A stretch of 64,000 nt of DNA from Gracilinanus agilis. Taxonomy: Eukaryota. The position numbers were made by a program, and so were the translations under genes. Positions 7,951 to 54,754 of the stretch are shown here, piece by piece (within the stretch, counting starts at the first letter, position 1; every line of letters starts with the position of its first letter). The DNA lies in NCBI RefSeq assembly GCF_016433145.1, contig NC_058133.1:476977330-477041329 (forward strand). Reading direction: 5' to 3'. The notes beneath the pieces are model-generated. The model did no database searches and was not told where the DNA came from. It saw only the letters and a program-made list of their open reading frames with translations.

Positions 7951-9070
7951 TGGTGGCAGGCAGCACCCCCAGCTGCCTTGACGTTGAGGACCTGCACCGG
8001 GGGAGAAGGGAGACTGCCGAGGTGTGAGGCCTAGGGAGCTGTGCATATAGGGCCAGTCAACAGAGTCAGAACCCATGTTTGGTGCAGGCACACAAAGGCA
8101 TAGAAAGGTTTAGAGGAGGCTGTAACAAGGCCAGGTGCACTGAAAACACCTGCAGGAAGGTACTGCCTCCCTCGGAAGGAGCCCCTCAGCCTAGGGTCTC
8201 AAAGCACCAGGGGAGGGATGGACTTTCCTCCTAATTAGAGGCCCAGAAGAATTTGCCCCCTCTCTGCCCCACCACCAGAAATTCCGGGCCAGGGCGGTGG
8301 TTTTGGTGGGGTGTTGAGGGGCAGCACGGGGCCCCATGAGGTCCAAGAGAGGAGAAAGGGGGATCCTGTTAAAGTCACACAAAATTCGTGGGTTCGAATC
8401 CTGCCTCCGACTGCTGGGGAGGTGGGGTGGGTTAGGAAGAGTCTCTCGGTTTCCTCAAACATAAAAGGAGGGCGGTTGTTCTAGAACAACTTTACTATGG
8501 CCTCTCGCAGCCCTGGGCTCCAGGCACATACTCGGCCTCGCCTGGGTCGGGGGTCGCCGTGGACTTAGGAGTCCATCTAGCTCAGCACCCTCGCTTGGGA
8601 GACGAGGCCACTTGAGGTTTTCAGGACCGCAAATGGTGGGGGTCAGCGGCTGAATTCGAACGCAGGTCCTCTGCTTCCAGAGTCAGAGCTCTCCTCCCAG
8701 TACAGCATCTCCTCCAGCTCGGTAGGGGTAACGGGCCCAGAGGCCCCTAAAAGCGGTGCCACGGGTTGGCGGGGAGGAGTTGGGAGGACGCTGGGTCTGG
8801 AGTCAGAGGTCTTACATTCGAATCCTACCGGCCACCAGTGGGGAGCTCTCGCTTAACACTCGGAGCCGCCACTTACCTCTCGGGGCCTCCGCGCCCTCAT
8901 CTGTCACGTGACGATGTCGGACCCGGCGGCCTCCGAGCACCCGCCCTTCTCCACACCCGCGAGCCCGGGGACCAGCCACGAGCTTCCCCGCCTCAAGGTA
9001 CTCCCCTCCGCCTCCGCCCCTCGGAGCCCCGCCCCCGGAGAGCTCCAGGAGGGGGCGGGGCCTCACGGGC

Positions 9071-9084
9071 GTCGTCATGGCAAC
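9071..9084 (+). promoter_or_regulatory. RFX X-box GTCGTC-AT-GGCAAC
   Basis: Fits RYYNYY-WW-RRNRAC and ends 10 nt before the RIIAD1 ATG. RFX factors regulate ciliary and flagellar genes. Confidence 0.7.
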
Positions 9085-9093
9085 CGCGACAAG

Positions 9094-12000
9094 ATGGCTT
9101 CCCTGTACTCCGGGCTAGAGGGTCCCGACCCAGGAGCGCTGAGCCAAGAACAGCTCACGAAGCTGAGGGATTTCAAGGTGGGCGCAGTCCCAGCGTAGAG
9201 AGGGGGGTAAGGGAAGTAACGCGGACACTGTGTCTGTGGGGTTCAGAGGAGGGTGGGAGGCGGGGCCACGGCTCCTCTCCTAGCCCCTCTCCGTTGGAAG
9301 AGCAGCATTTGGTCGAGGGTGGAGACAGAGCCAGAGCCAGAGCTCCTCTCCCTTCCCCTCCCCCCCCCGCGCAGGTGGCCTGGAGTCGGTCAAGGGGCGG
9401 GGGCAGGACCAGAGTTCCTCCCTCCCCTCCATCCCCAAGCGTGTCGGGTGCCCAGGTTTGGTCCGGGGTCGGGGTCAGAGCTCCTCCTTTCTCCCTCCGC
9501 CACGCGCGTCAGGTGCCCGGGTTCGGTCCGGGGGGCGGGGCCAGAGCTCCTCCCTTGCCCCACCCCCCCCCGCAAGGTGCCCGATCTTAGTCGAGGGGCG
9601 GGGCCGGCCCTCCTCTCTCCCTCTTCCCCCCAACCCCTCAGCCGGGGCTCCCAGCAGGGGGGGTCCCCAAGTGTCCCATCGATCTCCTTTCCTGACCAGA
9701 TCAACACGCGCATCGCTGACGAGAAGTACCTGCGCTCGCACAAGGAGGTGGGGCTGCTCCTGAGCGGCTTCTTCAGGTAGGTGACCCGGCCTCAAGACCC
9801 CGCGAGGCCCACGATGGCTGGGCTTCAGGCGCTCCGGTGCTCGGGAAGGGGGAGGGGGGCGGACGGGCATGGGCGGTCCCGGGAGCTCCTTCTCTCCCCC
9901 TCGCTCCCCCACGGTCCGCCCCTGGCTCTGCAGCCGCGGGAGCCAAGTTAATTTCTTCAGACAATTAGAGACAACTTTCCTACGATTCTGGTGATGTCCG
10001 GAGCCAGCATGGCTACATCGCTGACTGTGGGACCAGGCCTCACACTGCTTCGAGATGGATCGATCACCCATTCCCGACTCCCATTAGACCTTTCCACCTG
10101 GCGTTTGCCTGTTAGGGCCCGAACTGCCACAGAGAAGGAGCGGGATAGCAAACCCTCCTGGTGGTGAAGAGCAAAATGAAGACACTGAATGTGGCCACTT
10201 GGGTCTGATGCACAAGATGATGGATGGGAATGAGTGAATGAGGAGGGAGGGGGCAAGGGCTTTTTTCCATTTTTGCCTGAAAACTGAAATCGGGTTCTCT
10301 TCCCTAAGCCCCTTCGCCTCCCTTTCTTTACATTGATTCCTTCCTTTCAACCATTTTCTTAATTATTTGGGGCCCTGAAGGGGTAAAGAGAAACATTCAA
10401 ATCTAACGATGTTACTCTGTAAATCGTATTCTTTTTTTTTAATCCAAGAAAAGGTCGCAGTTGTAGGCCAGAGGGGTTTGTGGAGTCACTGTCTATATTA
10501 TCTGTTCACTGCTCCCACCACCACCAACCACCATTATCAGTTATGAGTAAAAAAAGGTTGGCTTTGTAATAATGCAATTAAAGTCAACCGTGATCCCCAA
10601 AGAGAGTGGAGACCTCTATTAAATACCTGAATTAAATCAACATTGATAATCCAGATCTTCAACAGTTAGACTATGTGGGGGGAATGGGAAAGGTGATGTA
10701 ATAGTAATTGCATGTCAACTGAGGTTCTACTTGGCTTGAAGAATTTCCAGGAGGAGCTTGGATCATTGAGAATTGGCTGTATCTATAATTACATTAAAGA
10801 TAACAGGATTCATACATGTCTGCCCAGTTGGCCCTGAGAAGTAGTGATGGTAGTTGCCATGGAGCAAAATTTTTGTCACTAGATGATTCCAATTTGCTCC
10901 CTCAAAGTTCTCCCAACTACATTCTTTTTGACCCATTCCATTCCCAATCTGCTTTCCTCTGTGGTTTTTACTATTTTACTAGGCAGTAAGAGAAGAAGGA
11001 AAGGGCATATTTAGGGTTTATTTGTTTTGTCTTTATGGCTGGGTGGCAACAGACTGAAACATTCAGCTTTTCATTTTTTTGGATGCTTCAGATAGCCCTG
11101 CTGAGAGAGAGCACACACTTTGCAGGGTTTGATTTTGTAGTATTTAGCTCCAGGATTGACCCAAGTCATGAAGTCACCGTGGTCTATGCTGGGGAAATGT
11201 CTTCCTACTTGGATCTTTCAAATCCTGCTGTTTTACTTACTATTTTATTCAGTCAGCCCTCTAGTATGTATTGGCATATATGTAAAACATATGCATATGC
11301 ATATAAATACAGTAGACAGAATTTCAAACTTAGAGATAAAAGGAGGGAATTAACTTATTTTATGGAACTTAAAACTTCTGGTTTAATATGAGGTACACAA
11401 TGTGTCAGATGGTAGTGTTCTGTCTCTTATTAGCCAAAAGGAAAGAGGAAGCAGAATTCATAGGGCTATGGAGTTAGGGAGTCCCCAGACATAAAAGTGC
11501 ATTACTGGGCAGCTGGGTAGCTCAGTGGATTGAGAGCTGGGCCTAGAGACAGGAGGTCCTAGGTTCAAATCCAGCCTCGGACACTTCCCAGCTGTGTGAC
11601 CCTGGGCAAGTCACTTGACCCCCGTTGCCTACCCTTACCAGTCTTTCACCTATAAGTCAATACACAGAAGTTAAGGGTTTAAAATTTAAAAAAAAAAGTG
11701 CATTACTGTAGTGTTGATTAAAATTAATATACAATAACTAAGTATTATATTTTATAAATTTTATTAATAATGACTAAAGTAAAAAAGCTAGAGTAGATAA
11801 GGTGCTAACCTGGCCTCGGTGGGGAGGAAGAGAGAGAAATGTGATTACACAAAATGGTGGAGCAATTAAAAGGAGTTCTGGGGAATGTAGTTCATTCCCA
11901 CTTATACAGTAGTCAAGGTCTGAGAACAGGTGTGTGGTTCATGATTGAGGGTAAGTCTAACAACTGGGAAAATAATACAAAAGAAAAATGAACTGTTGGA

Positions 12001-18322: not shown

Positions 18323-26174
<7,852 letters not shown>

Positions 26175-26719
26175 AGCCTGGGAGACCGAAATGTGAAGGG
26201 CCCAAGCGACTGGGAGAGAGAAAGGACCCCAGCGTGGACCAGAAAGGCTGCCGAGACGTGCCTGAGTCAGAACGTACTGCGCTTGCGCACGCGAGAGCAG
26301 GCGGTCGGGCAAGTCTCCTTTGGGTTTCTGACTGGAAAGGTCCTTGGGAAGCGCGTAGCCGAATCTCTAAACGAGAGCCGGAAAAGTAGAATGGTTAACG
26401 TTGTCCGATGTTTACTGGTCAAGCTTCGCGTCTGAGGAAATTTTCCGTTAGACGTCAATCCGCCTCACAGCGCAGTTTGTACAGAGTTGTTTGGGGCCCA
26501 CGATTTTAACAAAAATTTAAAAAGCAGCCTGATTTAGCCGTAAAGCAATCTCAGACCAAGTAGGAGAGCTGGATTCTAGTTGTCCGGTCTCTGGGATCTC
26601 AAGATTCTCCCACCAGGAAGGGGTCTTCCGGACATTAGAAAATTCGGGGACATTCCTCCTTAAAAGATGTAAGGAGACCGACTATCCTCAGCGATCACCT
26701 CTGTTTTAGAGGGCTTAAT

Positions 26720-28440
26720 CAGATATCGAAGGAAGAATGAACCAGATATCATTCTTCGCAAATAACATGGTGGTGTACTTCGAGAATCCTGGAGAATTAA
26801 CTGAAAAATTAGCTGAAATAATTAACAACGTTAGCAATGTTACAGGTTATAAAATAAACCCACACAAATCGCCAACATTTCTATATGTTGCCAACAAAGT
26901 TGAGCAAGAGGTAGACAACGAAGTTCCTTTAAAATCAATAGTAGATAATATGAAGTACTTGGGAGTCAATCTGCCAAGACAAACTCAGGAACTATATGAA
27001 CTCAATTACAAAATTCTTCACACAAAGTTAGAATTAAACAATTGGAAAAATGTCAGTTGCTCATGGGGTGGCTGGGCAAATATAATAAAAATGACAATTT
27101 TACCACCATACCAAACTACCCAAAAATTATTTTATAGTGCTAGAAAAAATATCAATTCATCTGGAAAAACAAACGGCCAAGAATACCAAAGGAATCAATG
27201 AAAACAAAATGGGAAGGAAGGTGGTCTAGCTATAGGTCTTGCTGTACCTACATCTCAAAATGTATCACAGTGGTAATCTTCAAAATAATCTGGTACTGGC
27301 TAAGAAATAAGAATGATAAGTGGAATAAATTAGGTACACACTACCTAGTGATAAGTGACCATAGTAATTTAGTGTTTGATGAATCAAAAGATCCATGCTT
27401 TGGGAACAAGAACTCACTTATTTGACAAAAATTTTGGGGAAAATTAGAAAATGGGATGATGACAGAGACAGGGATAGATGGTCAGTATGGATTCATGATT
27501 TAGACATAAAGGTTGATACCATAAGCAAATTAGGGTAGCATGGAATAATTTATTAGTCAGATTTGTGGATAAGGAAAGAATTTGACCTAATAAGAGATAG
27601 TGTGCATTATAGGATGCAAAATGGAGAATTTTGGTTATACTAAATTAAAAAGGGTTTGTACAAGCAAAACCAATGCAACCAAGATTGGAAGGAAAGCAGA
27701 AAGTTGGGTGAAAATTTTTACAGCAAGTATTTCTGATAAAGGTCTCATTTTAATATATGTAGAGAATGAAATCAAATTTACAAAAATATAAGTTATTTTC
27801 CAGTTGACAAATGGTCAAAGAATATGAACAGGCAGTTTTCAGAGGAAGAAATCAAAGTAATTTTTAGTCATATGAAAAAATGCTCCAAATTAGTCTTGAT
27901 TAGAGAAATGGCCATCAATTGAGGTATGGCTGAACAAGTTGTGGTAAGTGATTGTAATGAAATAGTAGTATGTTATAAGTAATGACAAGCAGAATGATTT
28001 CAGAAATATCTGGAAACATTTACATGAGCTGGTACAAAGTGAAGAAAGCAGAACTAGACTAGCAATATTTTTTGATGAACAACTGTGAATGATATATATC
28101 TTCTCAATAATATAGTGATCCAAGACAATCCCAGAGACTTGTGATAAAAAAAAAAAATGCCATCTCCCTTCAGAGAAAGAACCAGTGGAGTCTGAATACA
28201 GACCAAAACATACTACATTTCACTTCTTTTTTTTTTATTTCTTTCCCAAAATATGGAAAAACTATTTTATAAGATTGCACAGATAAAATCTCTTATCAGA
28301 TAGCTTACCTTCTCAGAATTGGGAGAAGTAGGAGTGAATAAAGGATAAAGGATAGGGAGGGAAAGAATTTGGAACTCAAAATTTTTTAAAAGAAAGTTAA
28401 AAATGTATTTTTACATGTAATTTGGGAAAAATACACAAAT
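26720..28440 (+). mobile_element. L1 LINE remnant (ORF2 RT/C-terminus and 3' UTR)
   Basis: Translation ISFFANNMVVYFENP...VTGYKINPHKS...MKYLGVNLPRQTQELYELNYK...WKNVSCSW is degenerate L1 ORF2, with FADD changed to FANN and frameshifts. Confidence 0.9.
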
Positions 28441-29298
28441 ATTTTTTTAAAAACAAACCAGACAGTTGTATGCTCCACAAAAGTGGTTTTGTAGCTGTCA
28501 CAGATAGTAGTAGGTTACAAATGGAAAAGAAGTTATAGATGGCTAGGTGACTTCCAACATTGTATATTGGTTACATCAAGTTCTGGAACAGTATAAGATT
28601 TCTCAAACAAACCCCACAAAAACTATAACTGAATTATCCTCATAATTAAAAAAACAGAAAAGGAATATTTTTCAGACTGTGACATATTCTACACATTGTA
28701 GGTACTTAATGCATATTAAATTGAATGAACATTGACTATGAGGAGAAGGAACCCTAAATTTATACCCCAAATTTGCCCAGAAGTTGTTGAATGGCAGGAT
28801 GAACTCTGAAGGAACTCTTATTCTGCCAAGTTAATAACATCATAGCAGGAAAGAATTAAGCAAAGAGATGAATACATTCTAGATTATGGGCCACATAGGA
28901 GGATACTAGTGGCTTTGTCAGTTGAGAAAAGAGGTGTTTAGAACACTTCATCCCTTGGATAGCAAGTAGTTTTATGGTGGAGAATATACCCTCTAACCTT
29001 TCCCCTTTCAAAATGCCACTACCTAGAATGGGGAGAGAGGCTAGCTAGTTTTTAAGGAAAGAATGACTTTCAGAGAGGAATGCTGGAAAGCCTAGGTGTT
29101 GTCTGTAAGTACCTTGAGCCATTGGGTGGAGTAGACACAGCAACAGTGAGATCCTGAGATGAGTTAGGGCTGGGGCTTCTGTCCATGTCACAGTGGGATT
29201 GTCTCTGGCCTAGTGGGTCACAATGGTAGGAGGTAGCAGGAGTCTCAGCTCCTCTTTCCTCATCTCACTTTGCCGCTGGGTGGCACTGAATTAACAAA

Positions 29299-31842
29299 CT
29301 GTCGTGTGTCAGGCTGTGCCCCGATACCTTTTCCCTTTCTTATATCAAGAAAGGGAAGAAAAGGAACTATTGTTACCCACCCTGCTCTCCTTTTGCCTAC
29401 CTTGATTACTGTTACACGTACAACTACATTGTCCGGGAGAAGATGCTGCCTTGTTACCCTTGTTTCAAAAGGTAATTAATTCTTTCAAACTTCCTTAGCC
29501 ACAGTTGCTCCTTTAATCTCTATTCTTCCATTGGTATTTCAGATTTCAAAAGAATTTACCAACTTGCAAGGAGTGGGAAAACACTGAAATAGGGTGGGAA
29601 TTTGGGATGCTTCTTCTCTAGAGAACTCTCAGTAATAAAGACGCTAGAATAGAGGACAGCAAATGAGGATTACTATAATAATTTGGGGGAAAGGAGATAG
29701 CACGAGGGGTCCAATGTGCCATATCCCTCCCCACCCCAGCCCCTACCCCATACACAGATGAGCTAATTTAGGCCCCTGCTTCTTAACCAGAACCACCGTA
29801 ACTGAGAGGGATAACCTGACACTCCGACCTCGGTGCTGCCTCCAGTGCTCCTGAGTCCCTAGCAGGCCTCCAGGTGGGCAGAAGCACTGAGCAGGGAGAC
29901 CACGACCAGCTCAAAGAGCTATATTCGGTAAGTGAACTCTAAGCAGGTCACCCTTCCTTCCACCCAGGCTTATTCTCTACAGTGACATCCTAAGAAAATA
30001 GTCAGTTAGAGAAGGGAGAATTAGAATCACAATTTTAGAGTTGTAAGGAAATGTAGTGATCTACTTGAAGCTCATTTTACAAATGAAAAAGCAGGCCCAT
30101 GGAGGAACAATTAAGACTAGAAACCAGGTGTTCTGACTCCCATTGTTTTTTATACTGTCTTTCTTAGTGTGACATGGTTAGTTTTGATTTTCTTATTCAT
30201 AAGAGGGAAGGGAGAGAGAGAAAACAAACTTAAATGATGAAAGAATTAGCAGAGTAGATAGTAAGCATGACAATGCCTAAATGAATAAGCAGAGAGCAGA
30301 AAAAGTTGGCATAATTGCCTTGAAAACAGGACAATATTGCTACATTGGGAAATTTTTTTCTGTTGGAATGATGGTAAAACAAAAGAAGGAATAAAATCTT
30401 CAAGTTCCTGAATTCTACAGGGAAAGATAAGTATTCATTCTTTTTTAGAAGAGAAAGGATAAAATGCTAATGATAAATTGAGGTTAGACAACATGATGTC
30501 TATAGATAATATGATTTTTGAATGATGTCTCTGGAATTAAACGGTACCATGGAATCTTCAATAATGAGATAACCTACATATATCTGGTACCCTCCCTCAA
30601 ACAAAGATTATGGTTTGGAGGAGTAGCAAGTTTGGATAGTAAGATCCAGGAAATTAAAACCTTCTCTACCCTTGGCATTTTTTTTTTCTTTACAGGCTGG
30701 GAACCTGACAGTGCTAGCTAATGAGTCCCTGCTTCACCAGGACCCAGTACAGTTAGATTTCCATTTCCGCCTCACCCCTCAGGCTTCTGTCCACTGGCAC
30801 GGCCTTCTCTGTGACCACCGGCTCTTCCTGGACATCCCCTACCGGGCACTGGACCAAGGCAATCGGGAGAGGTGAGAGTAGGCCCCCTTCCTTATCCTAT
30901 GCTTGATTACTCTAATGGGATAGCCAGGGAATAGTAAGTCAGCTATTTCAGAAACAGTGATGCTGTAGATGTGAAAGACCTTGCAAGGTACATGCACAGC
31001 TTAAATGAGCATGAAAAGGATATTATATGTAAGATGGTACACAGATGGAGCCAATCAGGTTTTCAGAGCATGGCCCCATAGACTAGTCAGTTTTCTTGGA
31101 GCTGGGCTTAAGGTGCACAAAACTATGGGGCCCTTAGGATTCTAGAAATTATGGTAGACCAAGAAGAGGCCTTAGTATAGAAGAATAATATTCTTCCTAA
31201 GAAAGGAAGGGTCTTTGGCATTTTGCTCAGGATAAGCCCAATAACAGCTACAGACCTCAAAGAAATATTCATACTACCAATTTATTTAAGTTGTTCTCTG
31301 GGTCAAGAGGACTAATGGAATTTGATTTTCTCTAACTAGGTCATCACCTCTATGGTTACTTATTCAGTAGCTTGTCTCTTTCTCTGACTCTTAGTTTGAC
31401 AGCAACACTGGAGTATGTGGAGGAGAAAACAGATGTGGACTCTGTGTTTGTGAACTTCCACAATGCTAGGAATGACCGAGGTACTGGGGTTGGGAAGCTA
31501 CCTTGTCCACTCTTCTCACTATTGTTCCTTTTCCTCTGCATTGCTGAGAACATGGGCTTGGGAAGTAATCCTTACTGGGAAAGTTTTCTATCTGTAATTG
31601 AGGGAAGCTGGGAGACAAAATAAGGGTGTGGAGAGGTGGAGGGGAATAAAGAACTTAGTGAGCTCAAAAGAGGTAATTTGCTTTTCCCCTCCCTTACAGG
31701 TGCCTTGCTTCGGGCCTTCAGCTACATGGGCTTTGAGGTGGTTAGACCTGACCACCCTGCCCTACCACCCTGGGACAATGTCATCTTCATGGTATACCCC
31801 CTTGAGAGGGATTGTGGCAACTTACCTAGTAAGCCTTCCTGA
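29299..31842 (+). CDS. OAZ3: Ornithine decarboxylase antizyme 3 (237 aa from CUG via +1 frameshift; 189 aa from AUG 29443)
   Basis: Exons 29299-29471, 29791-29927, 30696-30871, 31395-31480 and 31700-31842. ORF1 (CTG 29299, ATG 29443) ends CLQCS-TGA at 29852-29854. ORF2 in the +1 frame reads ESLAGLQVGRSTEQGDHDQLKELYSAGNLTVL...DIPYRALDQGNRESLTATLEYVEEK...LLRAFSYMGFEVVRPDHPALPPWDNVIFMVYPLERD. Confidence 0.96.
29849..29855 (+). other. OAZ3: Programmed +1 ribosomal frameshift site TCC-TGA-G
   Basis: The canonical metazoan antizyme shift site UCC-UGA sits at the ORF1/ORF2 junction. ORF2 has no AUG until the last exon. Confidence 0.93.
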
Positions 31843-31966
31843 ATCCATCCATGTTCCCACTCAAGTGGGAGGGCTGAAGTTTTAATATGGCTTAGGCCCC
31901 AGGCACAGTAGGATCAAAAGTCCTAGGCTTGTAGATGTGATTCAGGGCACCTCCTCCCAACCCAGG

Positions 31967-31972
31967 AATAAA
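31967..31972 (+). terminator. Candidate OAZ3 polyadenylation signal
   Basis: AATAAA 125 nt after the OAZ3 stop codon. Confidence 0.65.
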
Positions 31973-32879
31973 GGGTAGTAGAATCATCAATTCTTGATTT
32001 TTGTCTTAGTCTAATGGAATAACAGCATTGCAACTGTACATATTTAATCCTGATGCAACAAGGTCTAAGGCCAATGGTGCCAAATTCAAATAGAAACTGG
32101 GTCACTAATTTGTACAGGAAGATTCTTGCAGGCCACATCTTCCCTTAGTTTTAACATGTTAGTTTTAAATTGTATATTTTATTAATTTGGTTAAATATTT
32201 CCTAATTACAATATAATCTGATTCAAGCCTCACTTGATACATGTATGACACCACTGGAACAGTGGACTTCAGGAAGGACCTGGATTTTAATTTTGCCTTA
32301 AGCTTTACCTGTGTGACCAAAGGCATATCACAACCTGAGTCTGATGCCTCCTTCATGAAGGTGGGGATAATATTACCACCTACCTTCCAGGGTTGGTACA
32401 AGGATCAAAGGATGCAAATTCACAAACTAAAGCCTTATATAAATGTGAGCTATATTATAAATTATCTTTGTCCCCTTTGTCCATCCATGGGAGCAGATCT
32501 ACTGGTTCTGTCCCTTACTTAAGACCCTTTTAAGGCTTTATCAGGAATAGGGAACAAAGAGATTCTGGAGATTGATGACCCAAAGAACACAATAATTTTT
32601 GCTAAGAAGGGGAAGGAAAAAAATCCAAGCATTTCTATAGTGTCTGTTCTCATTTGATATCCCCGTAACAATTCTTTGAGGTGTTATTATATCCCCACTT
32701 TAAAGTTGAGGAAATGGAGACAAATGACTAAATTGTAGTTGTTTACTAAAGGGAAAGTTGCCTCACTGACCTATTGTTTCTCCTGAATCAGGGTCCATTT
32801 CTTCTGACAAATCAGTATTAGAATTTTCTGAGATAATAAAAAGTTATTGTGGACATAGCAAAAAAGATGAGGTTTAAGT

Positions 32880-33512: not shown

Positions 33513-34018
33513 AAAATAAAAATGACATTTCATTTCTATTAAAAATGACCACCCTGCATTTATGTACACATATTCTTTCAAAGAACTTTCATATATCTCA
33601 TCTCTTGGCTCTTAATAATGTTACTGAACAGATGGAGAAATGTGGGCCTAAATAGAGAACAAATCACTAAACCGTAGTCCTATGTCAACGTGCACTATTA
33701 TTGCTTGAGGTCACAGTGAACAAGTGAGGTACCAGACTTCTAGGTCTCCAGATTTCTAATTCTGGGCTTTTTCTATCACTAGCCATTGTTTTATTCACTG
33801 TTCCAAAACTGGCATTTGTTCTCAGGGAATCTTTTCCACGTGTTAATGAATGGGAAATTCATAAGGGGATAGACATTTCTCTTCCCTGGTTGGGACCTCT
33901 CAAATCCACAGGAGATTAAGGCACAAAGGCAGAATCTGTTCCCCTAACCTCTATGCCCACAGGACTGCTTCTACCACTAATTCAATGGACAGCTCTTGAT
34001 CATTTTTAAAAACAGAAC

Positions 34019-34508
34019 TTTATTTAGTAATGATTCCCCTAAGTGACTTACAGAGTTCTCTTTATTTTTACATACACACTCATGCACATACATATGGTAG
34101 GCAGTATACCTACCTAAGGCATTGCACCTTATTACATGTTCCTGAGCCAGCCCTCAGTTTTCTGACTTGCACTATCGCCTAGATTCAAAAGGGAAACGAC
34201 TGTCTCAAAAATCTTGCCTTCAATAATAATGGCATCACTTGAAGCTGGGAGGAAGCATTAATTGCTTATTTCCTTGGGGTATCTGGTTCAACCCTGTTGA
34301 TTTCCTACCCTGCTTCTTCCACAGTTGTAAAGACCCTGTGGAGGCTCAGAACTTCCTTAATTACAACTTAAACATTTTCCTAGTAAGTCATCTCAGAAAA
34401 TGAAGTAGATTTCTGAATGTTCCCTATTTCCACACTACTGGAACCCTAACCAATGTTTTCCAACCCAGTTCCAACAAATACCCTGCAAAGTAGGATAGTG
34501 CTTTTATT
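34019..34508 (-). terminator. Candidate TDRKH polyadenylation signals
   Basis: Minus-strand AATAAA at 34508-34503, 34066-34061 and 34024-34019. Confidence 0.4.
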
Positions 34509-34973
34509 GCTGGTAGTGGCTGTGGCCAGTGCTAAGGTAATTCCTTCTAAGGCAGCATCTGACAGACACACATGCACACACATTTATAGTCTTTTTCTGA
34601 AAAAGTCCTTCATTCTGCTAGAAAAGCAGCAGCTGTATTTGGCTCACAGCAGGTCAATCAGTAGGTAGCTCACAAAGGAGGAAATATGGGGTTATCTTCT
34701 ATGGAATTCGATTTTCTGTTCAGCCAGAGGTTCCCATGCCATAAACCTTGCCACTTCCTAAGCATAGACACAAATATGAGAAAGAGTCAATATAGAACAA
34801 GTCAAGTTTGGAGAATAACAGCCACAGAAAAGGAACATTAGGATCAGGGAGAAGGAAGCGAGAATGCAGCAACTCCCCATCCTCACCCCTCACCGTTTTC
34901 CTGCTCCATAAGACACAAATCAGAGCCCCACTCACACAGCAGGCAGATGGCTGAGCCAGCCAGAGCACAGACA

Positions 34974-37900
34974 TCAGAGCAAGTCGTCTTCTGCAAGGAC
35001 ACCATCATCACCAGAAACTGAAGCAGCTTCTAATCAAAGACAGGATAGGAAAATTAGACAATGCCAAATTTAGTGGGCCATTTCCAAAAGGACTAGGTTG
35101 GGCAGAACCAGTGAGAAAATGAGAATTCCTAGGGTTAAACAACCTGGCAAAGAACCAAGACATTCAACTTTTCCAATTCAATCCCCTAATCTAAGGTAGG
35201 CAACCAGGAGTTTCAAAGGAGGGTAGGGTAGGATAGGATATATTGATGGATACCTGATAAGCTGAGGCATGAGAGTGTGTGTGGTGTCTCTCCAGGGCTT
35301 TTCTTGGCCTCAGACAAGAGGCTATCTAGAGAGGTATCTGTTTCTGTGACCTGAGGAAGGTTAACAGAAAAAGTGAAAAATTCGGCGTCAGTAAATGGGG
35401 CATGGGAGAAGGAAACAGATCACTGCCCCAACAATGTTAAATACGAACTACGGAATTCTGAGAGTGGCTGTTTGGCCTTGGAAAGTTAATGAAGCCATCT
35501 TGGCCCCAAGGAAAGGGCAGAATCCTAGGCTGTGAACTGGGCTTCCCCAGGGGTACCACCCTACACAACCACTGGAGCTCACCCACCAATATATCCTGCA
35601 GCATCTCAGGGACAGCAGCATCTCCTTCTCCTACATCTTGAGGGAGCTCAACTGCAAAACCCTGGCGCACAAGTTCTAGCCCAATATCAAGATTCTGGAG
35701 GAAGGAAAAAACAAGGGATTAAGAAGGATAACTTTCTGATGCTAGTCATGAAAATAAGAGAGGAAGGGTAAGGTAAGGAATTTGGGGAAATAAGGAATAT
35801 CCTCAAAGGTCTAGAGACCCAAGGACAAGGGGTCCTGAATTTTCTGCCTCACCAAGATAATCCAATGATTCTCTAGGCCTCACCTGTCCATTGGTTGTGT
35901 CATAAAGGTGAATTTCTGGCCAAGTAGAAATCCCTGTTTGCACATAGCTGGAAATCTTGGCTACCAGAGGCTTCCACTCTGCACAATGAGTGAGGCGGTC
36001 AAACTCATCTAGGGCTTCCTCTTCCCAATGTTCACCTGGTGAAATAGGAAGGAGTTAGTGCTGAGAACTGGAATAAAATCAGGAGACTGTCTATCTTTTT
36101 CCTCTTCAAAAAGGAATAAATACTTGTTCAGGAAATAGAAAAGGGAGTAAATGTCCAGCAAGAGATTTCCTGGTTCATTATGGCATACAACCTTTCTAGT
36201 AAGGACGAACAGAAGTGGTCTGAACTCCTGGAAGATCTGTCAAGAAGTAGCCAGATGAAATATGAATTTTTCCAGTGTGCTATGTGGAGCTCATTCTGCC
36301 CTGAGACCAAATCACATGGCTAACTTACCTGAGGGAACAATCCTTGCTAGACTACATTCTATTGCTTGGAATGGAAGGCTTAGGAAGTCACTCCTGAAGT
36401 TTAAAAAAAAGAAAAAGAAAAAACTGTAATCAAGACTTATGACAAGATGGATCTTCTAAAAGTCACCATGTCTCTCTGCTTTTAGATTACACATGACATA
36501 TGTGCAAATACTAAACTGTTTCCATTCCAAATCTCTTAATGAGCTCCACAATCTCTCCATCTGACAGGGATGAGATGATTGGAATTAGGATCTGAATTTG
36601 ATTTCTCACCCCACATCCAAATGTGACTAACTTTGTACTGACCTGATGGCTCTCAAATCCTTGAGTGGGCTCTCTCCATTATCTCCAAAGTCAACAAAGT
36701 AGAGATCCAGGTTCCCATTCTCGAGGGTACCCAGAACACGGGCCCGATACCAGGGCCCATCTGTAGGTAAAGGTGCAGCTACAATGTCACCCACGTGCAC
36801 GGTCAGATCTTCAGGCTATGTGTCCAAGTTGGAGGTAGAGAAAAGGGGAGGATGGCAATGACAAATAGATGGGTCAGACAAGAAAAGGTGAGAGAAGAGA
36901 ACAAATAGCCCATATGAGCCATAGAAAAACCAGTTCTCAAAGGGAAAGGAAGAAAATACAGAGAAAGGGAAAAGTGGAGGATATTCCTTTCCCTTAAGCC
37001 CTAATATCCCCACCACCCCCAAGTCCATATGGCAACTCACTGACTGAGTGTTCTCATAGTATTGGGTCATCTCGTTGACCAGCTTGTCCAGCTGTAAGCT
37101 GCGGGAGCCAATAATCTGGATCCAGAAATGGTTGGGGTTTTCAGAGGCAGACACATAGACTTCTAGATATTCGTCAGCATGGAAACTGAAGTCAGGGCTG
37201 GGGACTGAACATATTGTGGGGTTGAGGTTGGTGACAAAACCACCCCAGGCAAGTAGATGAGGGAATGGGGCTAAGGAAGTGGTAGCTTTTCAGCTCTCAA
37301 AATACTCAAGAACAAAACGATTCACTGAAGAGAGAACTTTTATACTTCTCTTGTTCCTTTCCCATTATAACACCATGACATAACTGAGATCCCCAGTCAC
37401 ATTTTACATCCCTTTAGATGTTGGTTTCCTTTGGAAATTGTTAACAACTCCCACTGAACAAGGGGAGGCTAGGTGGCTCAGTTGATACAGAGCCAGGCCT
37501 GGGGATGGGAGTTTCTGGGTTCAAATCTGGCCTCAGACATTTCCTAGCTGCATAACCCTGAACAAGTTACTTAATCCCAATTAACCTGGCTCTTACCAAT
37601 CTTCTGCTTTAGATCAGATACTTACTATCAATTCTAAGACAGAAGGTAAGAGTTTAAAAAAAAAAGAAAATAGATTGAACACAAGAAGGTACTGGGCAGT
37701 AACAGATTTGTATTCTAGTGTCTATCTTGGATTCAAGACAAGGCCCTCCCCACCATCCCCAATGGACCCCTAAGCTTCCCATTTGTCATTCCAACCCACA
37801 GCTTCCACTCATGAGAGAAAAAGCTTCCAAACCCTGGGATCTTCCTCTGTACGGACACTGGAAAAAGATCTATGACATAACTACAAAGTAACAGAACCAA

Positions 37901-40900
37901 TTCCACAAACCACATAAGAAAAACAGTTTCATTCCTTTGTAATCACACCTCATGCTGAAGGAGAAATGTTTTGATGAAAAATTATATAAATCCAAGGAAG
38001 AGTCAATTTTTAATTAGTTGCTGGATTATCTGAAGAAAATCTTTAACCCTGGTTTACTTGGCTTACAGCAAAAGATTTTCAAGTTGCCTTTTCTTGCCAC
38101 CACTTTGTACTTTGGAAATGGACTGCTGGGATAACTATGGGCAATATTATTAGCTTAAGAACTGGCTATTTTCAAAGAATCACGATTCATTTCCAAGACA
38201 AATATATTTTTGGTTATCTGTAACTTTCAATTATCCATGTGAGTCCTCCCCCATTGGTTAGCATGGACAATCAAGTTGTCATTGGAGATAACATACTTTC
38301 AAACTTTGGCATCTCTGGACTGGCTTGGGCTCCAGCATCCTCCTGGCAGCTGTTGTCACTGAGTATTTTTTCATGGGAATGTTCCACCCGTTCTAGTCTC
38401 AGCCCAGCCATATCTCCTCCTCCTCGGCTAGGAGTGGCACCCAGGGAGGGAGTCAGCTTCTTGCTGCTGGTGCTCATGTCCTTAGGAAAGGCTGGCTCTC
38501 CAGCTGCTCCGGGCCCTGCTACCTCTTCTCTCTTGACACTGATGGGTTGCTTGCGCTGTACTCTGGATTCTGCCGAGTGAGCAATCCTCTTCCTAAGCTC
38601 TTCATCTTCTGAAACTTTCTCTAGGATGAGATGCTTTTGGAAATGCCAGAAAAAGAGAAGGAATAATCAGCTCAGATTCTCAAGATAAGAGGACAGGAAA
38701 GGGGCTCTTCTGATTCAGATATATATGCCCAGCTCTAGTCAATACCCACCTTGGCTGCTGCCACTTCCTTCTGTGTTCCTGAGATCTTTATGAGTCTTGT
38801 TAGTAGTAATGTCCCTTCTGATTCCTTGTCACAGGTGATTTTGGCCCCAGAGCTCTTGCAGATGGCTCGAATGGTCTCTCCACCCCTCCCTACAAAAAGA
38901 CATGCATATAAATTTCTCTGTTATCTTTCTTGCTTATTCTTTGTAGCAACTAGAAAAATCAGTGCAGGTAAGAATTCATTTTCATTTCCAAAATGAGTCA
39001 AGCACTTGGTTCTTAAATAAATGCATGAACACTAATGTTCTGGAAGTTCAGGAATGCTCTTGAAATCTTTCCTGCCAATATATCCTCCAGGCAAGGAATG
39101 TTTAATCTTTTTTTTCTTTTAACTTAAATATTTTAGGTAGATTCAATTCCTTCACTACAAATACCTCTATTTTCCAAAACCATTCAGGGAGACTCTACTC
39201 TTCAGTCCTAAAATAATCTAGAATTCTCTACTAGAACGGGATAGCTGACAGAACAGTGAACAAATTAATTGGAAGAACTGGGTTCTAGTCCTTGCTGTGG
39301 GGGACTCAACTCCATGCATGGTCTTGGAGATGTCAGAGCTTGGAGTGTGTTTGCTATTCTGTAAAATGTATCTGCCCTGCCTACCTAAGTAATGGCATTA
39401 TAAGGTGCATAGAAAACTAGCTTATCAATTACATTTTGAATACTATGAAGTGTTATAAAATTTTAAGATCTATAATAGTAACATGAAGGGATGACACTTT
39501 ATGGGAAAGTATATATTCTACCATCTTCAAAGATTAAGAATATACCATGCACAGCCTTAACTATTCTTTAATCTAAATCCTTTAACGAATTTCTCCAAAA
39601 CCTTTTTGAATTTTTATTTTGGGATATTTGAGATGAATTGGGTAAAATTACTTGTTGTTAACATCTTTTGGATCTCCCCTTACAAAGATGATACTGACCA
39701 AGAAAAACATCTGAAAAGAAGATATGAAGATGTAGAAAGGAAAAAGCATCAGAGGGAGACAATAGTACCTATTATTCTGCCCACAGATCTCTGAGGTACT
39801 GAAAGCTGTTCATACACAGGGGTGTTCTCTGTCAGGATCTGGTGGATTGCTGCTTTGGCTTTGCAAACCTGGACAGGAAAGCCACTGATGAGTAGCACCC
39901 GCTCCTCACCTACATCTTCTGTGTCCACATCAATACGAGCACCAGTCTGTTTCCTCAACTAGGGGAAGGAGGAAAGGGAAAGTGTATACATTTATGCATT
40001 TGGAAGGCCTCAGGGACATAAATTGTTTGGAATGGCCAACATGGGAATCTGTTTTGCTTGACTATATTTGTTACGAAAGCTTTCTTTTTTCTTTTTTAAT
40101 GGGGCATGGGAAGAAAAGAAAAATCTATTTTGGTTAATTAAAGAAATTAAAAGAAGAGGCCTCATGAGAACTGGTTATTGATTCTTTAACACAAATTATG
40201 GGTGATCTAGGGGGATGGAAGGGAGGGACTGTGGCTATCTAGACTACTCCTTGATCTAGCTCCTAACTGAAAATCTAGTTAACCCTTATTTTATTTGTAC
40301 TGAAGGTCAATGAATAATTAATGAAGAAGCTAACATTACAAAAAGCATTCAGGATTATAATACTTTTTTTCCCTTCAAGTGGGTTTCTTTTTTTAAAGTC
40401 AGTATTATTTTAGGTCTGCATTCTCTTCCCTTTCCTCCCCCCACTCCCAATTGAGAAAGCAAGAACTGTAAAAATCCATTACAAACATGTACACTTGAAT
40501 AAGATGTATTCCTCCAATATAAAAAAAAAAATGTCTCAATCTGTACTCTTGAGTCCTTCACCTCTCTATCAGGAGATAGGTAGCATGTTTCATCACAAGA
40601 TTGCTGGTAAAATGGTTTCTTCTTGACTTTTGGGTTCAGAAGTTTTTCCAAAGTTGTTTTGTCTTCACAATACTGTGATTATATAAATTGTTCTCCTGAT
40701 TTTTATTCATTTTACACTGTATCAGTTCATATAAATCTTCCCAGGTTTCTCTGAACCTACTCCCTTTATTATTTTTATAGCACAATGGTATTTCATCATA
40801 TTCATATATCATAATTTGTTCAGACACTCTCCAATTGATAGGTACCGTCCTCAGTTTCCAATTCTTTGCCACCACAAAAAACGCTGCCATAAATATTTTT

Positions 40901-43900
40901 GTCTACTTTTTTCCTCTTTTTATTCTCTAAACCAAAATTGCATACACTGGATAAAAGGATATGTATGGTTTTACCAGTTTTTGGTGTATAGTTCCAAATT
41001 GCTTTTTTGCACGGCTAGATCAGTTCACAGTTCCATCAACTGTATATGAAAGTAATGCTTTGCCCCATACCCACTCCAGCATCTATTCTTTTCTTTTTTT
41101 TTTCCTTTGGGGGTAGGTGGGGGAGGTCAACTTTGCCAATCTGAAAAGTATGAAGTAAAACCTTGGCGTTTTGTTTGTATTTCTCCAATTACTAGATATT
41201 TAGAGTATTTTTTCCTATGGTTATTTATAGCTTAGGTTTCTTCTGAAAAGTGGCTATTCATATTCTTATCAGTTCCCTGAGTGAGTACCTTAGAAATGAA
41301 ACTTTTATCATAAACTTACTCCACGGATTCCCCCCTCTCCCATTTACTAAGCAGTTTAATTTTTCTAGTTATTATCTAGATTGGGGAGATGGTAAGATAC
41401 AATTGCTTTCCCCAACATTCTGACAAAAGAGGAAGGTGACGTATTAGGTATATATGGTGGGTAGCAGGAAAAGTCAGGAACTTAATATTTACAGTAAAAT
41501 ATCTACAAAGTAAGTTTCAGAGTACCTGAGTAGTCTGTTTCTTGAATGTAAGAGCCTTATATAATAAAATTACATCTAAATTGAATACTGTCATCTGAAG
41601 AGAGCAATTTAACTTGCCAAAGGTACTTTTCTCTAAAGACAACTTATTTTACATATGTGCATGTGATGTTTGAGGGTAGGGAGAAAAATCTACAAACATG
41701 AAATATCCATAAAAGCCAACATACTTACCTGTTTAATATTGGCTCCTTGACGGCCAATGATCAGCTTCACAGCTTCTTGAGGAACCCGCATCTCCACCTC
41801 AATATCATCTTCCCCAACGAATGTCAACCGTTCTTCTACAAAATGACCATCGGATTAGCCCTGATGCCAAAGACTAACACTCCTCACCCCAAGGTCACTC
41901 CTACCCCAAGGACCTAACTGTCAAAAACAAATGAGAAGCCAAGAGAGAAAAACGGGAAAAGAAACCCAAACATAGCAGCAAACAAAAGTGCTATCTGAAT
42001 GGGAACCTGGAGATTCCAGAAGATTTGACTGGCATACAGGAGAGCTCTGTTGAATGCTGCTTCACAGATGCCAAAGCAGGAAAAGCTCATTAATCCTACA
42101 AGAAAAGTGTGCTGAGCTTCATACAGGCCTTTGATTCCAAACTGTCTCTAATGTTACCAGGAAAGAATCCTGTAAGACAGTATGGTGGGGAGGGGAAGGG
42201 AAAACTAGGTGGCTCAGTGGATTAAGAACCAGGCCTAGAGAAATGAGGTGACCTGGGTTTGAATCTGGCCTCAGATACTTACTACCTGTATGTCTCTGGA
42301 CAAGTCACTTAACCTCCACTGCCTAGCCCTTACTGCTCTTCTGCCTTGAAAACCAATACAACAATACGGATTCTAAGACAGAAGGTAAAGGTTAAAACAA
42401 ACAAAAAAAGATAGTATCCTAAGATTCCAGAACTTGCCTAGTTTTTCTGTTCAGATTCAGAACTTATCCCACCAAATTTTTACAATCCATCTACATCTTG
42501 AAGCATTGCCCATTAGTGAGGACGGTATGAGTGATAAAGACACTGACTTTTCCTCAAGGATGAATAGGAAAACATATAAAAAGAATAGGGCATTTAGACA
42601 TACACATACATATACACACATAAAGAACCCACTCCTCGGGATCCAAGATATATAAATAACAGATATAAGACCAAAAGCCATTCCCCAAAAGATAAGTGGT
42701 CAAAGGATATAAACAAACATCAAAATAAGAATTGCAAACTATTAACAATTATATAGAAGAATGTTTCAAATCACATATATTAAGAGAAATACAAATCAAA
42801 ACAACTATGCTGTTGCATCTTACACCTGATTTATTGGCAAAGATGAAAAAAAGATGGAAATACTTAATGTAGGAGGGGCTGTGGGAAAATAGGCACACTA
42901 AGGCATTACTGGTGGAACTGTGAATCAGTACAACTACTTTAGAAAACAATTTGGAATTATGCAAATAAAATGACTAAAAATGTCCCATTATCCTTTGACC
43001 CAGAGACTCCAGGACTATACTTATTTCTCCAAAGAGGTGAAGGATAATAATCTCCACATACACCAAAATATTTATAATAGCATTTTTCATGGTAGCAAAG
43101 AATTCAAAACAAAGTAAATAACCATTAACTGGGCAAAAATTATGGTTTGGAATGGAATACTGGCATGGAAAATGGAATATTGCTGTGCTATAAGAAATTC
43201 TGTGTGTGATGAACACAAAGAAGCATGGAAAGATCTACGTGAACTAGAGCAGTAAAGGAGGGCCAAGGAAACGATACACCCAACAACCACGACAATATAA
43301 ATGGAAATAACCACAAAAAAAAGGTCAGAAGCAAATGTTGGCAAATTACAAAGAAAAGACATGACTTGAAAGAAGAGCTATGAGACACTTCCACCTCTCC
43401 TCTTTGAAGAGGTAAGAGGCCCAGAAGTACCATATATTGTATGTATTTTCAGATTTTGTCAATGTATTGAGAAGTTATACTGACTTAAAATGTCATTTGT
43501 TGTATGAGACAGCTTTCTGGGAGGGGGAGGTATAGTGGGGAGAATTATGAAGATGTGAAAAAACAGACGTCAATAAAAACATGAAGAAAAAAAAAAGAAC
43601 CCACTACAGTTGTATTGTTGATTCACTGCTTAGATCAACAGAGCTCTCAGAAAAAAGGTAGATGAACTGGTATCTCAGTTCATAGGCTAGCCACTAGTGG
43701 CATATTTGATGTAACAAAAGGAAAGGTCCAGGGTCTCTGTGCTACTAGCAATAGCAGCCAACTGGCAAAGACCCCTTAAGTTATTTCTAGTTGTAATGTA
43801 ACAAATTATCAAGACTAAAAGGTTTAACATTTTTTATTTCAGGTTAATGAAATATGTTAGTTTATAAACTTTCCATTTTATAATATGCATATACAACAGT

Positions 43901-54623: not shown

Positions 54624-54754
54624 NNNNNNNNNNNNNNNNNNNNNNNNNNNNNNNNNNNNNNNNNNNNNNNNNNNNNNNNNNNNNNNNNNNNNNNNNNNNN
54701 NNNNNNNNNNNNNNNNNNNNNNNNNNNNNNNNNNNNNNNNNNNNNNNNNNNNNN
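54624..54754. other. Assembly gap (N run)
   Basis: 131 consecutive N. Confidence 1.

What the first reader, a model, noticed from the sequence alone, without database searches (positions are those of the whole stretch)
29791..29927. OAZ3 needs a programmed +1 frameshift at TCC-TGA-G: antizyme recoding in a marsupial
Seen: spliced ORF1 ends ...LTLRPRCCLQCS at TCC 29849-29851, then TGA 29852-29854. Skipping one base gives GAG TCC CTA GCA... and an open 159-aa antizyme domain across four exons to TGA 31842. The +1 frame is closed just upstream (TAA 29799-29801, TGA 29817-29819) and has no AUG until SYM in the last exon. No splice choice I could find joins the frames. Known: antizymes use polyamine-stimulated +1 shifting at UCC-UGA as feedback on ornithine decarboxylase, and OAZ3 is the spermatid-specific paralogue. 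Inference: the OAZ3 shift site predates the marsupial-eutherian split. Automated annotation will tend to break or mis-splice this gene.
Basis: partly seen in the sequence, partly recalled or inferred. Interest (0 to 1): 0.85.

Follow-up and report, generated by a model that had tools for sequence, protein, structure and literature searches.

The report
OAZ3 programmed +1 frameshift site

Summary
A five-exon gene lies on the + strand at 29443-31842, and every intron is GT..AG. ORF1 ends at TCC 29849-51 / TGA 29852-54. The +1 frame from 29853 stays open for 159 codons to TGA 31840-42.

ORF2 is an antizyme domain. It is 94-97.5% identical to eight marsupial OAZ3 proteins and sits in their clade. 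The gene lies between MRPL9 and TDRKH, as OAZ3 does in Tasmanian devil and monito del monte.

The same TCC-TGA-G, in the same ...LRPRxCLxCS|E... context, is present in the genomic DNA of four other marsupials, a hedgehog, the platypus and a turtle. It is therefore not an assembly error.

Third-codon-position variability switches from frame 0 to frame +1 at the site. There is no OAZ1/2-type pseudoknot, as published for OAZ3.

Two corrections:
- One splice choice does join the frames: a cryptic CAG|T acceptor at 29844-45. I judge it unlikely to be used but could not exclude it here.
- ORF1 probably starts at a conserved CUG (29299), not the AUG.

No reads could be laid, so frameshifting in this species is inferred. 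Ivanov and Atkins (2007) and existing OAZ3 database records for marsupials already cover this. Interest is low.

The parts
29299..29471 (+). OAZ3 exon 1 coding part. A conserved in-frame CUG lies at 29299, 48 codons before the AUG at 29443. The donor is AG|GTAATT after 29471.
   Evidence: Frame 0 is open from 29290 and the CUG is exactly 48 codons upstream. The aligned codon is CTG in Sarcophilus, Dromiciops, Phascolarctos, Antechinus and Erinaceus. A 48-residue CUG extension is described in PMC1874602.
29791..29927 (+). OAZ3 exon 2. It holds the end of ORF1, the shift site and the first 25 codons of ORF2.
   Evidence: Splice sites and frames were verified. It is 95-97% identical to exon 2 of three other marsupial genomes.
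29849..29855 (+). +1 frameshift site UCC-UGA-G. TCC is 29849-51, TGA is 29852-54, and T 29852 is the base skipped.
   Evidence: Read directly from the sequence. The heptamer is identical in genomic DNA of 4 other marsupials, hedgehog, platypus and painted turtle. The junction S30|E31 matches annotated marsupial OAZ3 proteins without gap or overlap.
29844..29845 (+). Cryptic AG (the CAG Gln codon of ...CLQCS). Used as an acceptor it would join exon 1 to the ORF2 frame. It is the only splice bypass available.
   Evidence: It is the only AG in 29820-29852. The offset is 55 nt = 1 mod 3. The upstream 20 nt are 70% pyrimidine, the same as the real exon 2 acceptor. A Mirounga gene model (P0024) uses the equivalent join. 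Platypus has CGG here.
30696..30871 (+). OAZ3 exon 3 (ORF2).
   Evidence: Verified. The 58-aa piece hits proteins named OAZ3 at E 1e-27 to 1e-29.
31395..31480 (+). OAZ3 exon 4 (ORF2).
   Evidence: Verified. Pfam ODC_AZ profile positions 47-72, E 0.032 for this piece alone.
31700..31842 (+). OAZ3 exon 5 (ORF2), with stop TGA at 31840-42.
   Evidence: Verified. Pfam ODC_AZ positions 77-113. It matches solved antizyme 1 chains 4zgz_B, 5bwa_B and 1zo0_A at E about 1e-8.
31967..31972 (+). AATAAA, the likely poly(A) signal, 125 nt after the stop.
   Evidence: Found. Words of 31700-31990 are held by RNA-labelled runs.

Best explanation
The locus is the orthologue of OAZ3 (ornithine decarboxylase antizyme 3) in a marsupial.

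The mRNA carries two overlapping reading frames:
- Ribosomes start in ORF1, probably mostly at the conserved CUG at 29299 and also at AUG 29443, and reach UCC-UGA at 29849-54.
- Most are expected to terminate there, releasing a 78- or 30-residue ORF1 peptide.
- A fraction, with peptidyl-tRNA-Ser on UCC and the A-site on UGA, skip U 29852 and continue at GAG 29853. They make the 189- or 237-residue antizyme, whose ODC_AZ domain is encoded entirely in ORF2.

Shown here: the two-frame anatomy, the identity of the gene, and conservation of the exact site and of frame-specific constraint.

Inferred from published work on mouse and human OAZ3: that the shift occurs, that polyamines promote it, that its efficiency is low and it works without an OAZ1-type pseudoknot, and that expression is in post-meiotic male germ cells.
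For: Anatomy.

Antizyme domain:
- Collinear ODC_AZ hits on the exon 4 and exon 5 pieces.
- Solved antizyme 1 chains at E about 1e-8.
- Precomputed PF02100 on the near-identical marsupial proteins.

Orthology:
- All best hits are named OAZ3.
- ORF2 is 97.5% identical to Dromiciops XP_043819300.1 and 96% to Sarcophilus NP_001277230.1 (189 aa = 30 + 159). ORF1 and ORF2 abut at residues 30|31.
- A 97/97-supported clade holds the window with the 8 marsupial OAZ3 proteins.
- The MRPL9(-) - OAZ3(+) - TDRKH(-) order is collinear with Sarcophilus and Dromiciops over 22 kb.

Not an assembly error: TCC-TGA-G stands at the homologous place in seven other independent genomes, from marsupials to turtle.

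Frame switch under selection: variable columns by codon position are 4, 3, 9 in frame 0 over the 48 nt upstream, and 5, 4, 9 in frame +1 over the 45 nt downstream.

No OAZ1/2 stimulator: no Rfam antizyme frameshift element at E <= 10, and the 3' folds are not unusual (z -0.4 to -1.8). This agrees with PMC1874602 and PMC5009743.

Transcription: RNA-labelled runs of a close relative hold 0.58 of the words of exon 5 plus 3'UTR, but only 0.17-0.23 of the 2.6-kb genomic stretch. The exon share by my arithmetic is about 0.24. This fits a spliced mRNA.
Against: There is no read-level, ribosome or protein evidence from this species.

A cryptic acceptor at 29844-45 could in principle give ORF2 without a shift, and its pyrimidine tract is as good as that of the real acceptor.

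Published OAZ3 frameshifting in heterologous cells is very low (PMC5009743). The ORF1 peptide may therefore be the main product. The counts in the codon-position test are small.
Confidence: 0.93

Rival explanations
1. Splice bypass. ORF2 is reached not by ribosomal slippage but by an alternative 3' splice site, CAG|T at 29844-45. This drops the first 55 nt of exon 2 and joins exon 1 (phase 2) directly to the +1 frame, giving ...CFK-S-APESLAGLQ...
For: It is the only AG in the permissive interval, and the offset of 55 nt equals 1 mod 3. It has 70% pyrimidines upstream, as the real acceptor does, and a CTGAC branch-like motif about 26 nt upstream. A gene predictor chose the equivalent join in Mirounga (P0024).
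Against: The 55 nt that would be skipped are conserved in frame 0 from marsupials to turtle (...LTLRPRxCLQC), with changes mostly at frame-0 third positions.

UCC-UGA is invariant in all 8 genomes. That would be needless if splicing did the job.

Platypus has CGG instead of CAG, so no AG, yet it keeps the shift site.

Seven NCBI marsupial models keep the whole exon 2 at the cost of a LOW QUALITY flag.

Published cDNA work in mouse and human supports shifting.
Confidence: 0.03
2. Artefact or decay. The in-frame TGA comes from a one-base assembly error, or the gene is a pseudogene.
For: A single extra base is the commonest kind of assembly error. NCBI's pipeline treats the site as one (LOW QUALITY PROTEIN).
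Against: The same T is present in seven other genome assemblies. A run of the window's own organism holds all sampled words of the stretch (X19), though it may be the sample the assembly came from.

ORF2 is intact over four exons with canonical splice sites, and it is 94-97.5% identical to its orthologues.
Confidence: 0.01
3. The frame change is made on the RNA, by transcriptional slippage or editing that removes one base, rather than on the ribosome.
For: Nothing specific. It cannot be excluded without reads.
Against: There is no homopolymer run at the site (GCUCCUGAG) on which a polymerase could slip. The antizyme literature establishes ribosomal shifting.
Confidence: 0.01

Closest known systems
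Mammalian OAZ3 / antizyme 3 (OAZ-t), as described for mouse and human (Ivanov et al. 2000; Tosaka et al. 2000; reviewed in PMC1874602 and PMC5009743)
   Same: Shared features:
- ORF1 ending ...PRxCLQCS at UCC-UGA-G.
- ORF2 in +1 encoding the whole antizyme domain.
- No OAZ1-type pseudoknot or 5' modules.
- A conserved in-frame CUG 48 codons upstream of the AUG.
- Neighbours MRPL9 and TDRKH.
   Different: Codon -6 is UGC (Cys), not UCC (Ser), in this and the four other marsupial genomes. The upstream 'pseudo-frameshift site' GN-UCC-UGC noted for human is therefore GG-UGC-UGC here. Expression and shifting are untested in this species.
Marsupial OAZ3 database records: Sarcophilus harrisii NP_001277230.1, plus XP_ models of Dromiciops, Trichosurus, Notamacropus, Vombatus, Macrotis, Phascolarctos and Antechinus
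   Same: Same 30 + 159 = 189-residue product with the join at S30|E31. ORF2 is 94-97.5% identical, and they share one well-supported clade.
   Different: None is identical to the window's product, so the window comes from another species. Most of those records are flagged LOW QUALITY PROTEIN rather than annotated as recoding.
OAZ1 / OAZ2 frameshift cassette (Rfam antizyme frameshifting stimulation element; UGG-UGC-UCC-UGA with a 3' pseudoknot)
   Same: UGC-UCC-UGA shift site, +1 direction, and the ODC_AZ domain in ORF2.
   Different: There is no match to the Rfam element and no significant 3' structure. The base after UGA is G. Protein identity to an OAZ2 is only about 43%. According to PMC5009743, OAZ3 may store rather than destroy ornithine decarboxylase.

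Membership tests
Ornithine decarboxylase antizyme (Pfam ODC_AZ, PF02100) | ODC_AZ domain | tested here: met
   The exon 4 and exon 5 pieces hit PF02100 collinearly at profile positions 47-72 and 77-113. They score 14.6 + 21.3 bits against a cut-off of 24.2, and each piece alone is below it. Exon 5 matches solved antizyme 1 chains at E about 1e-8. Proteins 94-97.5% identical to ORF2 carry a precomputed PF02100. The spliced ORF2 was not scanned as one sequence.
Ornithine decarboxylase antizyme (recoded gene) | Two overlapping ORFs, with the domain in ORF2 at +1, no usable start in ORF2, and ORF1 ending at UCC-UGA | tested here: met
   The +1 frame is closed at 29799-801 and 29817-19, and its first Met is in the last exon.
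Ornithine decarboxylase antizyme (recoded gene) | Ribosomes actually shift +1 at the site, and polyamines promote it | not testable with these tools
Indirect support only: frame-specific third-position variability switches at the site.
OAZ3 paralogue | Orthology to OAZ3 rather than OAZ1 or OAZ2 | tested here: met
   All named hits with E below 1e-28 except one fragment (P0087, UniRef: antizyme 1) are called OAZ3 or carry a generic name, and the first OAZ2 appears at 43% identity. The window sits in a clade with 8 marsupial OAZ3 proteins, support 97/97.
OAZ3 paralogue | Conserved position between MRPL9 and TDRKH | tested here: met
   Gene calls in the Sarcophilus, Dromiciops, Trichosurus, Notamacropus, koala and Antechinus loci. 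The window is collinear with L001 and L003 over about 22 kb.
OAZ3 paralogue | No OAZ1/2-type 3' pseudoknot or 5' stimulatory modules | tested here: met
   No Rfam match at E <= 10. Fold z-scores are -0.4 to -1.8. This is as stated for antizyme 3 in PMC1874602 and PMC5009743.
OAZ3 paralogue | Conserved CUG-initiated N-terminal extension of 48 residues | tested here: met
   CUG at 29299 with the frame open. It is conserved in 4 marsupials and hedgehog, but interrupted by TAA in both Sarcophilus assemblies. Its use as a start codon was not tested.
OAZ3 paralogue | Expression restricted to post-meiotic male germ cells | not testable with these tools
   Run tissues are coded. The word shares fit a spliced mRNA in RNA-labelled runs of a close relative but say nothing about tissue.

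The most novel reading that the evidence does not exclude
Besides the canonical frameshift product, this gene may make a frameshift-independent antizyme 3 isoform. It would use the cryptic CAG|T acceptor at 29844-45 and lack 18 ORF1 residues. That would uncouple part of OAZ3 output from polyamine sensing.
Probability: 0.04. Interest if true: 0.45.

Novelty: already known. Interest (0 to 1): 0.12.

Why it matters
The main value is for annotation. This gene is a standing trap for pipelines. Of 82 public OAZ3 models examined, only 32 have the correct junction. The platypus RefSeq model avoids the shift site by reading intron and the +1 frame.

A correct model for this genome needs a ribosomal-slippage annotation at 29851/29853, and probably a CUG start at 29299.

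Biologically it adds one more species to a recoding event already documented from fungi to mammals. It also shows that the OAZ3-specific site context is present in genomic DNA of a monotreme and a turtle.

Tried and rejected
I did not try to get round this.
- Rfam at E <= 10 over 28500-32500 gave only chance-level hits and no antizyme element.
- Folding 60-120 nt 3' and 60-90 nt 5' of the site gave no unusual stability.
- A Pfam scan of the ten longest ORFs in the window, meant to find neighbours, gave only a weak RVT_1 fragment. Synteny was obtained instead from orthologous loci.
- No supplement of PMC1874602 is held as text, so its marsupial alignment could not be compared.
- No DNA was served for the Trichosurus and Notamacropus loci.
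- Other frame-joining splices were considered by inspection: donors at the GTs 29833 and 29845 joined to exon 3 run straight into a stop, and mini-introns within exon 2 would be too short. I rejected them.
- The full spliced ORF2 was never sent to a search tool as typed letters. Exon pieces by reference and local BLAST were used instead.

Full report
OBSERVATION

I read 28600-32300 and rebuilt the gene in a script.
- Exons on the + strand are 29443-29471, 29791-29927, 30696-30871, 31395-31480 and 31700-31842.
- All four introns are GT..AG with good pyrimidine tracts.
- From the AUG, ORF1 is 30 codons and ends ...LTLRPRCCLQCS at TCC 29849-51, followed by TGA 29852-54.
- Starting at 29853, the +1 frame is open for 159 codons to TGA 31840-42.
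- The +1 frame is closed upstream at TAA 29799-801 and TGA 29817-19, and it has no Met before the last exon.

The hexamer TCCTGA occurs 26 times on this strand of the window, so the motif alone means nothing. Its placement is what counts.

WHAT IT IS

Searched apart, the exon 4 and exon 5 pieces hit Pfam ODC_AZ collinearly at profile positions 47-72 and 77-113. Exon 5 matches solved antizyme 1 chains at E about 1e-8.

A full-library HMMER search with the 58-residue exon 3 piece returned proteins that their sources call ornithine decarboxylase antizyme 3. They come from eutherians, platypus, turtles, squamates and amphibians. A profile search then brought in a 90%-identity cluster of ten marsupial OAZ3 records.

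Local BLAST of my two pieces gave these results:
- ORF2 is 97.5% identical to Dromiciops XP_043819300.1.
- ORF2 is 96% identical to Sarcophilus NP_001277230.1 and to the Trichosurus and Antechinus models.
- It is at most 90% identical to eutherian proteins.
- ORF1 residues align to positions 1-30 of the 189-residue marsupial proteins and ORF2 to 31-189, with no gap or overlap.

A maximum-likelihood tree puts the window in a 97/97-supported clade with the eight marsupial sequences.

Gene calls around OAZ3 in Sarcophilus and Dromiciops show MRPL9 (-) upstream and TDRKH (-) downstream. The window is collinear with both loci over about 22 kb. MRPL9 corresponds to about 19.1-26.4 kb and TDRKH to about 34-41 kb.

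IS THE T REAL, AND HOW OLD IS THE SITE?

I fetched orthologous genomic loci. All of the following carry TCC-TGA-G at the homologous place, in the context ...LRPRxCLxCS|E...:
- Sarcophilus (two assemblies)
- Dromiciops
- Phascolarctos
- Antechinus
- Erinaceus
- Chrysemys
- Ornithorhynchus

An assembly error in this window is therefore excluded for practical purposes. The OAZ3 site also predates not just the marsupial-eutherian split but the mammal-sauropsid split. Caecilian and snake models that read ...VPE... through the site imply the same nucleotides there too, though I did not check their DNA.

Across therians plus turtle, variable alignment columns by codon position are 4, 3, 9 in frame 0 for the 48 nt upstream. 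They are 5, 4, 9 in frame +1 for the 45 nt downstream. The frame under purifying selection changes at the shift site. The counts are small.

MECHANISM

No match to the Rfam antizyme frameshift element was found at E <= 10. The 60-120 nt after the UGA, spliced, fold no better than shuffles (z -0.4 to -1.8).

This agrees with the literature:
- Much initiation is at an upstream CUG.
- Termination at the UGA yields an ORF1 peptide, p12, with its own activity.
- Antizyme 3 may store rather than destroy ornithine decarboxylase (PMC5009743).

In the window, frame 0 is open back to 29290 and a CUG sits at 29299, exactly 48 codons before the AUG. The aligned codon is CUG in four other marsupials and in hedgehog.

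My reading is therefore as follows. Ribosomes start at CUG or AUG. Most terminate at UGA, and a minority shift +1 on UCC-UGA-G to make the antizyme. The anatomy and its conservation are shown here. The shift itself, its polyamine response and its tissue are inferred from mouse and human work.

RIVAL: SPLICING

Only one AG (29844-45, the CAG of ...CLQCS) lies between the last +1-frame stop and the UGA. An exon starting at 29846 is 55 nt (= 1 mod 3) downstream of the normal start, so exon 1 would run into ORF2 as ...CFK-S-APESLAG....

Points in its favour:
- Its upstream 20 nt are 70% pyrimidine, like the real acceptor.
- A CTGAC lies about 26 nt upstream.
- A Mirounga gene model uses the equivalent join.

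Points against it:
- The 55 nt that would be skipped are conserved in frame 0 out to turtle.
- UCC-UGA is invariant.
- Platypus has CGG there, so no AG, yet it keeps the shift site.
- NCBI's marsupial models keep the whole exon despite the LOW QUALITY flag.

I give this rival about 3%. Only reads can close it.

RNA EVIDENCE

I did not try again by any route.

The run searches give indirect support. One organism, B, holds all sampled words and is probably the window's species. RNA-labelled runs of another, A, hold 0.58 of the words of exon 5 plus 3'UTR, but only 0.17-0.23 of the 2.6-kb genomic stretch. By my arithmetic the exonic 31-mers are about 0.24 of that stretch. This fits a spliced mRNA of a close relative. 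It says nothing about the T at 29852 or about tissue.

NOVELTY

[quoted passage not shown] Sarcophilus has an NP_ record of 189 residues, and seven other marsupials have XP_ models. From my own knowledge, an NP_ prefix marks a curated record, and 'LOW QUALITY PROTEIN' marks a model that the pipeline corrected against the genome.

The finding is a correct rediscovery. Its practical content is the annotation warning, which the data bear out: only 32 of 82 models that reach exon 3 have the right junction.

I checked it and it holds, with the Sarcophilus exception listed under things noticed in passing. A word search of the scan's notes found nothing on antizymes elsewhere in this genome.

Noticed in passing
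window 29299-29442: The CUG-initiated 48-codon extension of ORF1 is open here, and the CUG is conserved in Dromiciops, Phascolarctos, Antechinus and Erinaceus. In both Sarcophilus assemblies the extension is cut by an in-frame TAA (L001/L002 9917), where Antechinus has AAA. The extension is therefore not kept in every marsupial.
   Followed up: partly
L005 3001-3320 (Ornithorhynchus): Platypus has a canonical exon 1 donor (AG|GTACCC) and an exon 2 whose frame 0 ends ...LSLRPRPCLRCS at TCC-TGA (3260-3265). The RefSeq model XP_028911311.1 instead reads on into the intron and then reads exon 2 in the +1 frame (...ASGPAPASGVPEPPP...). It thereby hides the frameshift.
   Followed up: partly
window 29834-29839 and homologous places in L001, L003, L004, L006, L008: The 'pseudo-frameshift site' GN-UCC-UGC reported 15 nt upstream of the real site in human is GG-UGC-UGC (Cys-Cys) in all five marsupial genomes. 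In hedgehog it is GC-UGC-UGC, and in turtle UAC-UGC. PMC1874602 says the one marsupial known then shared the human 'solo occurrence'. I could not see its alignment.
   Followed up: partly
window ~19100-26400 (-) and ~33900-41250 (-): Blocks collinear with MRPL9 and TDRKH of Dromiciops and Sarcophilus flank OAZ3. Their exons in the window were not modelled.
   Followed up: partly
window 26737-27201 (+): A 154-codon ORF with a weak reverse-transcriptase (RVT_1) match, E 0.001 and below the Pfam cut-off. It is probably a LINE relic in the MRPL9-OAZ3 spacer.
   Followed up: no
window 8001-10000: A GC-rich stretch (0.64 against about 0.40 elsewhere) has several long ORFs on both strands and no Pfam match. 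It looks like a CpG island of an unidentified gene.
   Followed up: no
window 54624-54754: The only run of N in the window (131 bases). It was left as it is.
   Followed up: no
public OAZ3 protein models (P0002-P0116): Models fail in recognisable ways: exon 2 read in the +1 frame upstream of the site (...SAPES......SVPEF...), micro-introns around the UGA, the cryptic-acceptor join, or truncation to an internal Met.
   Followed up: partly
window 31700-31990: Runs labelled organism A hold only 0.58 of the sampled words, while organism B runs hold 0.89-1.00. Most public RNA data are therefore from a close relative rather than from the window's own species or population.
   Followed up: no
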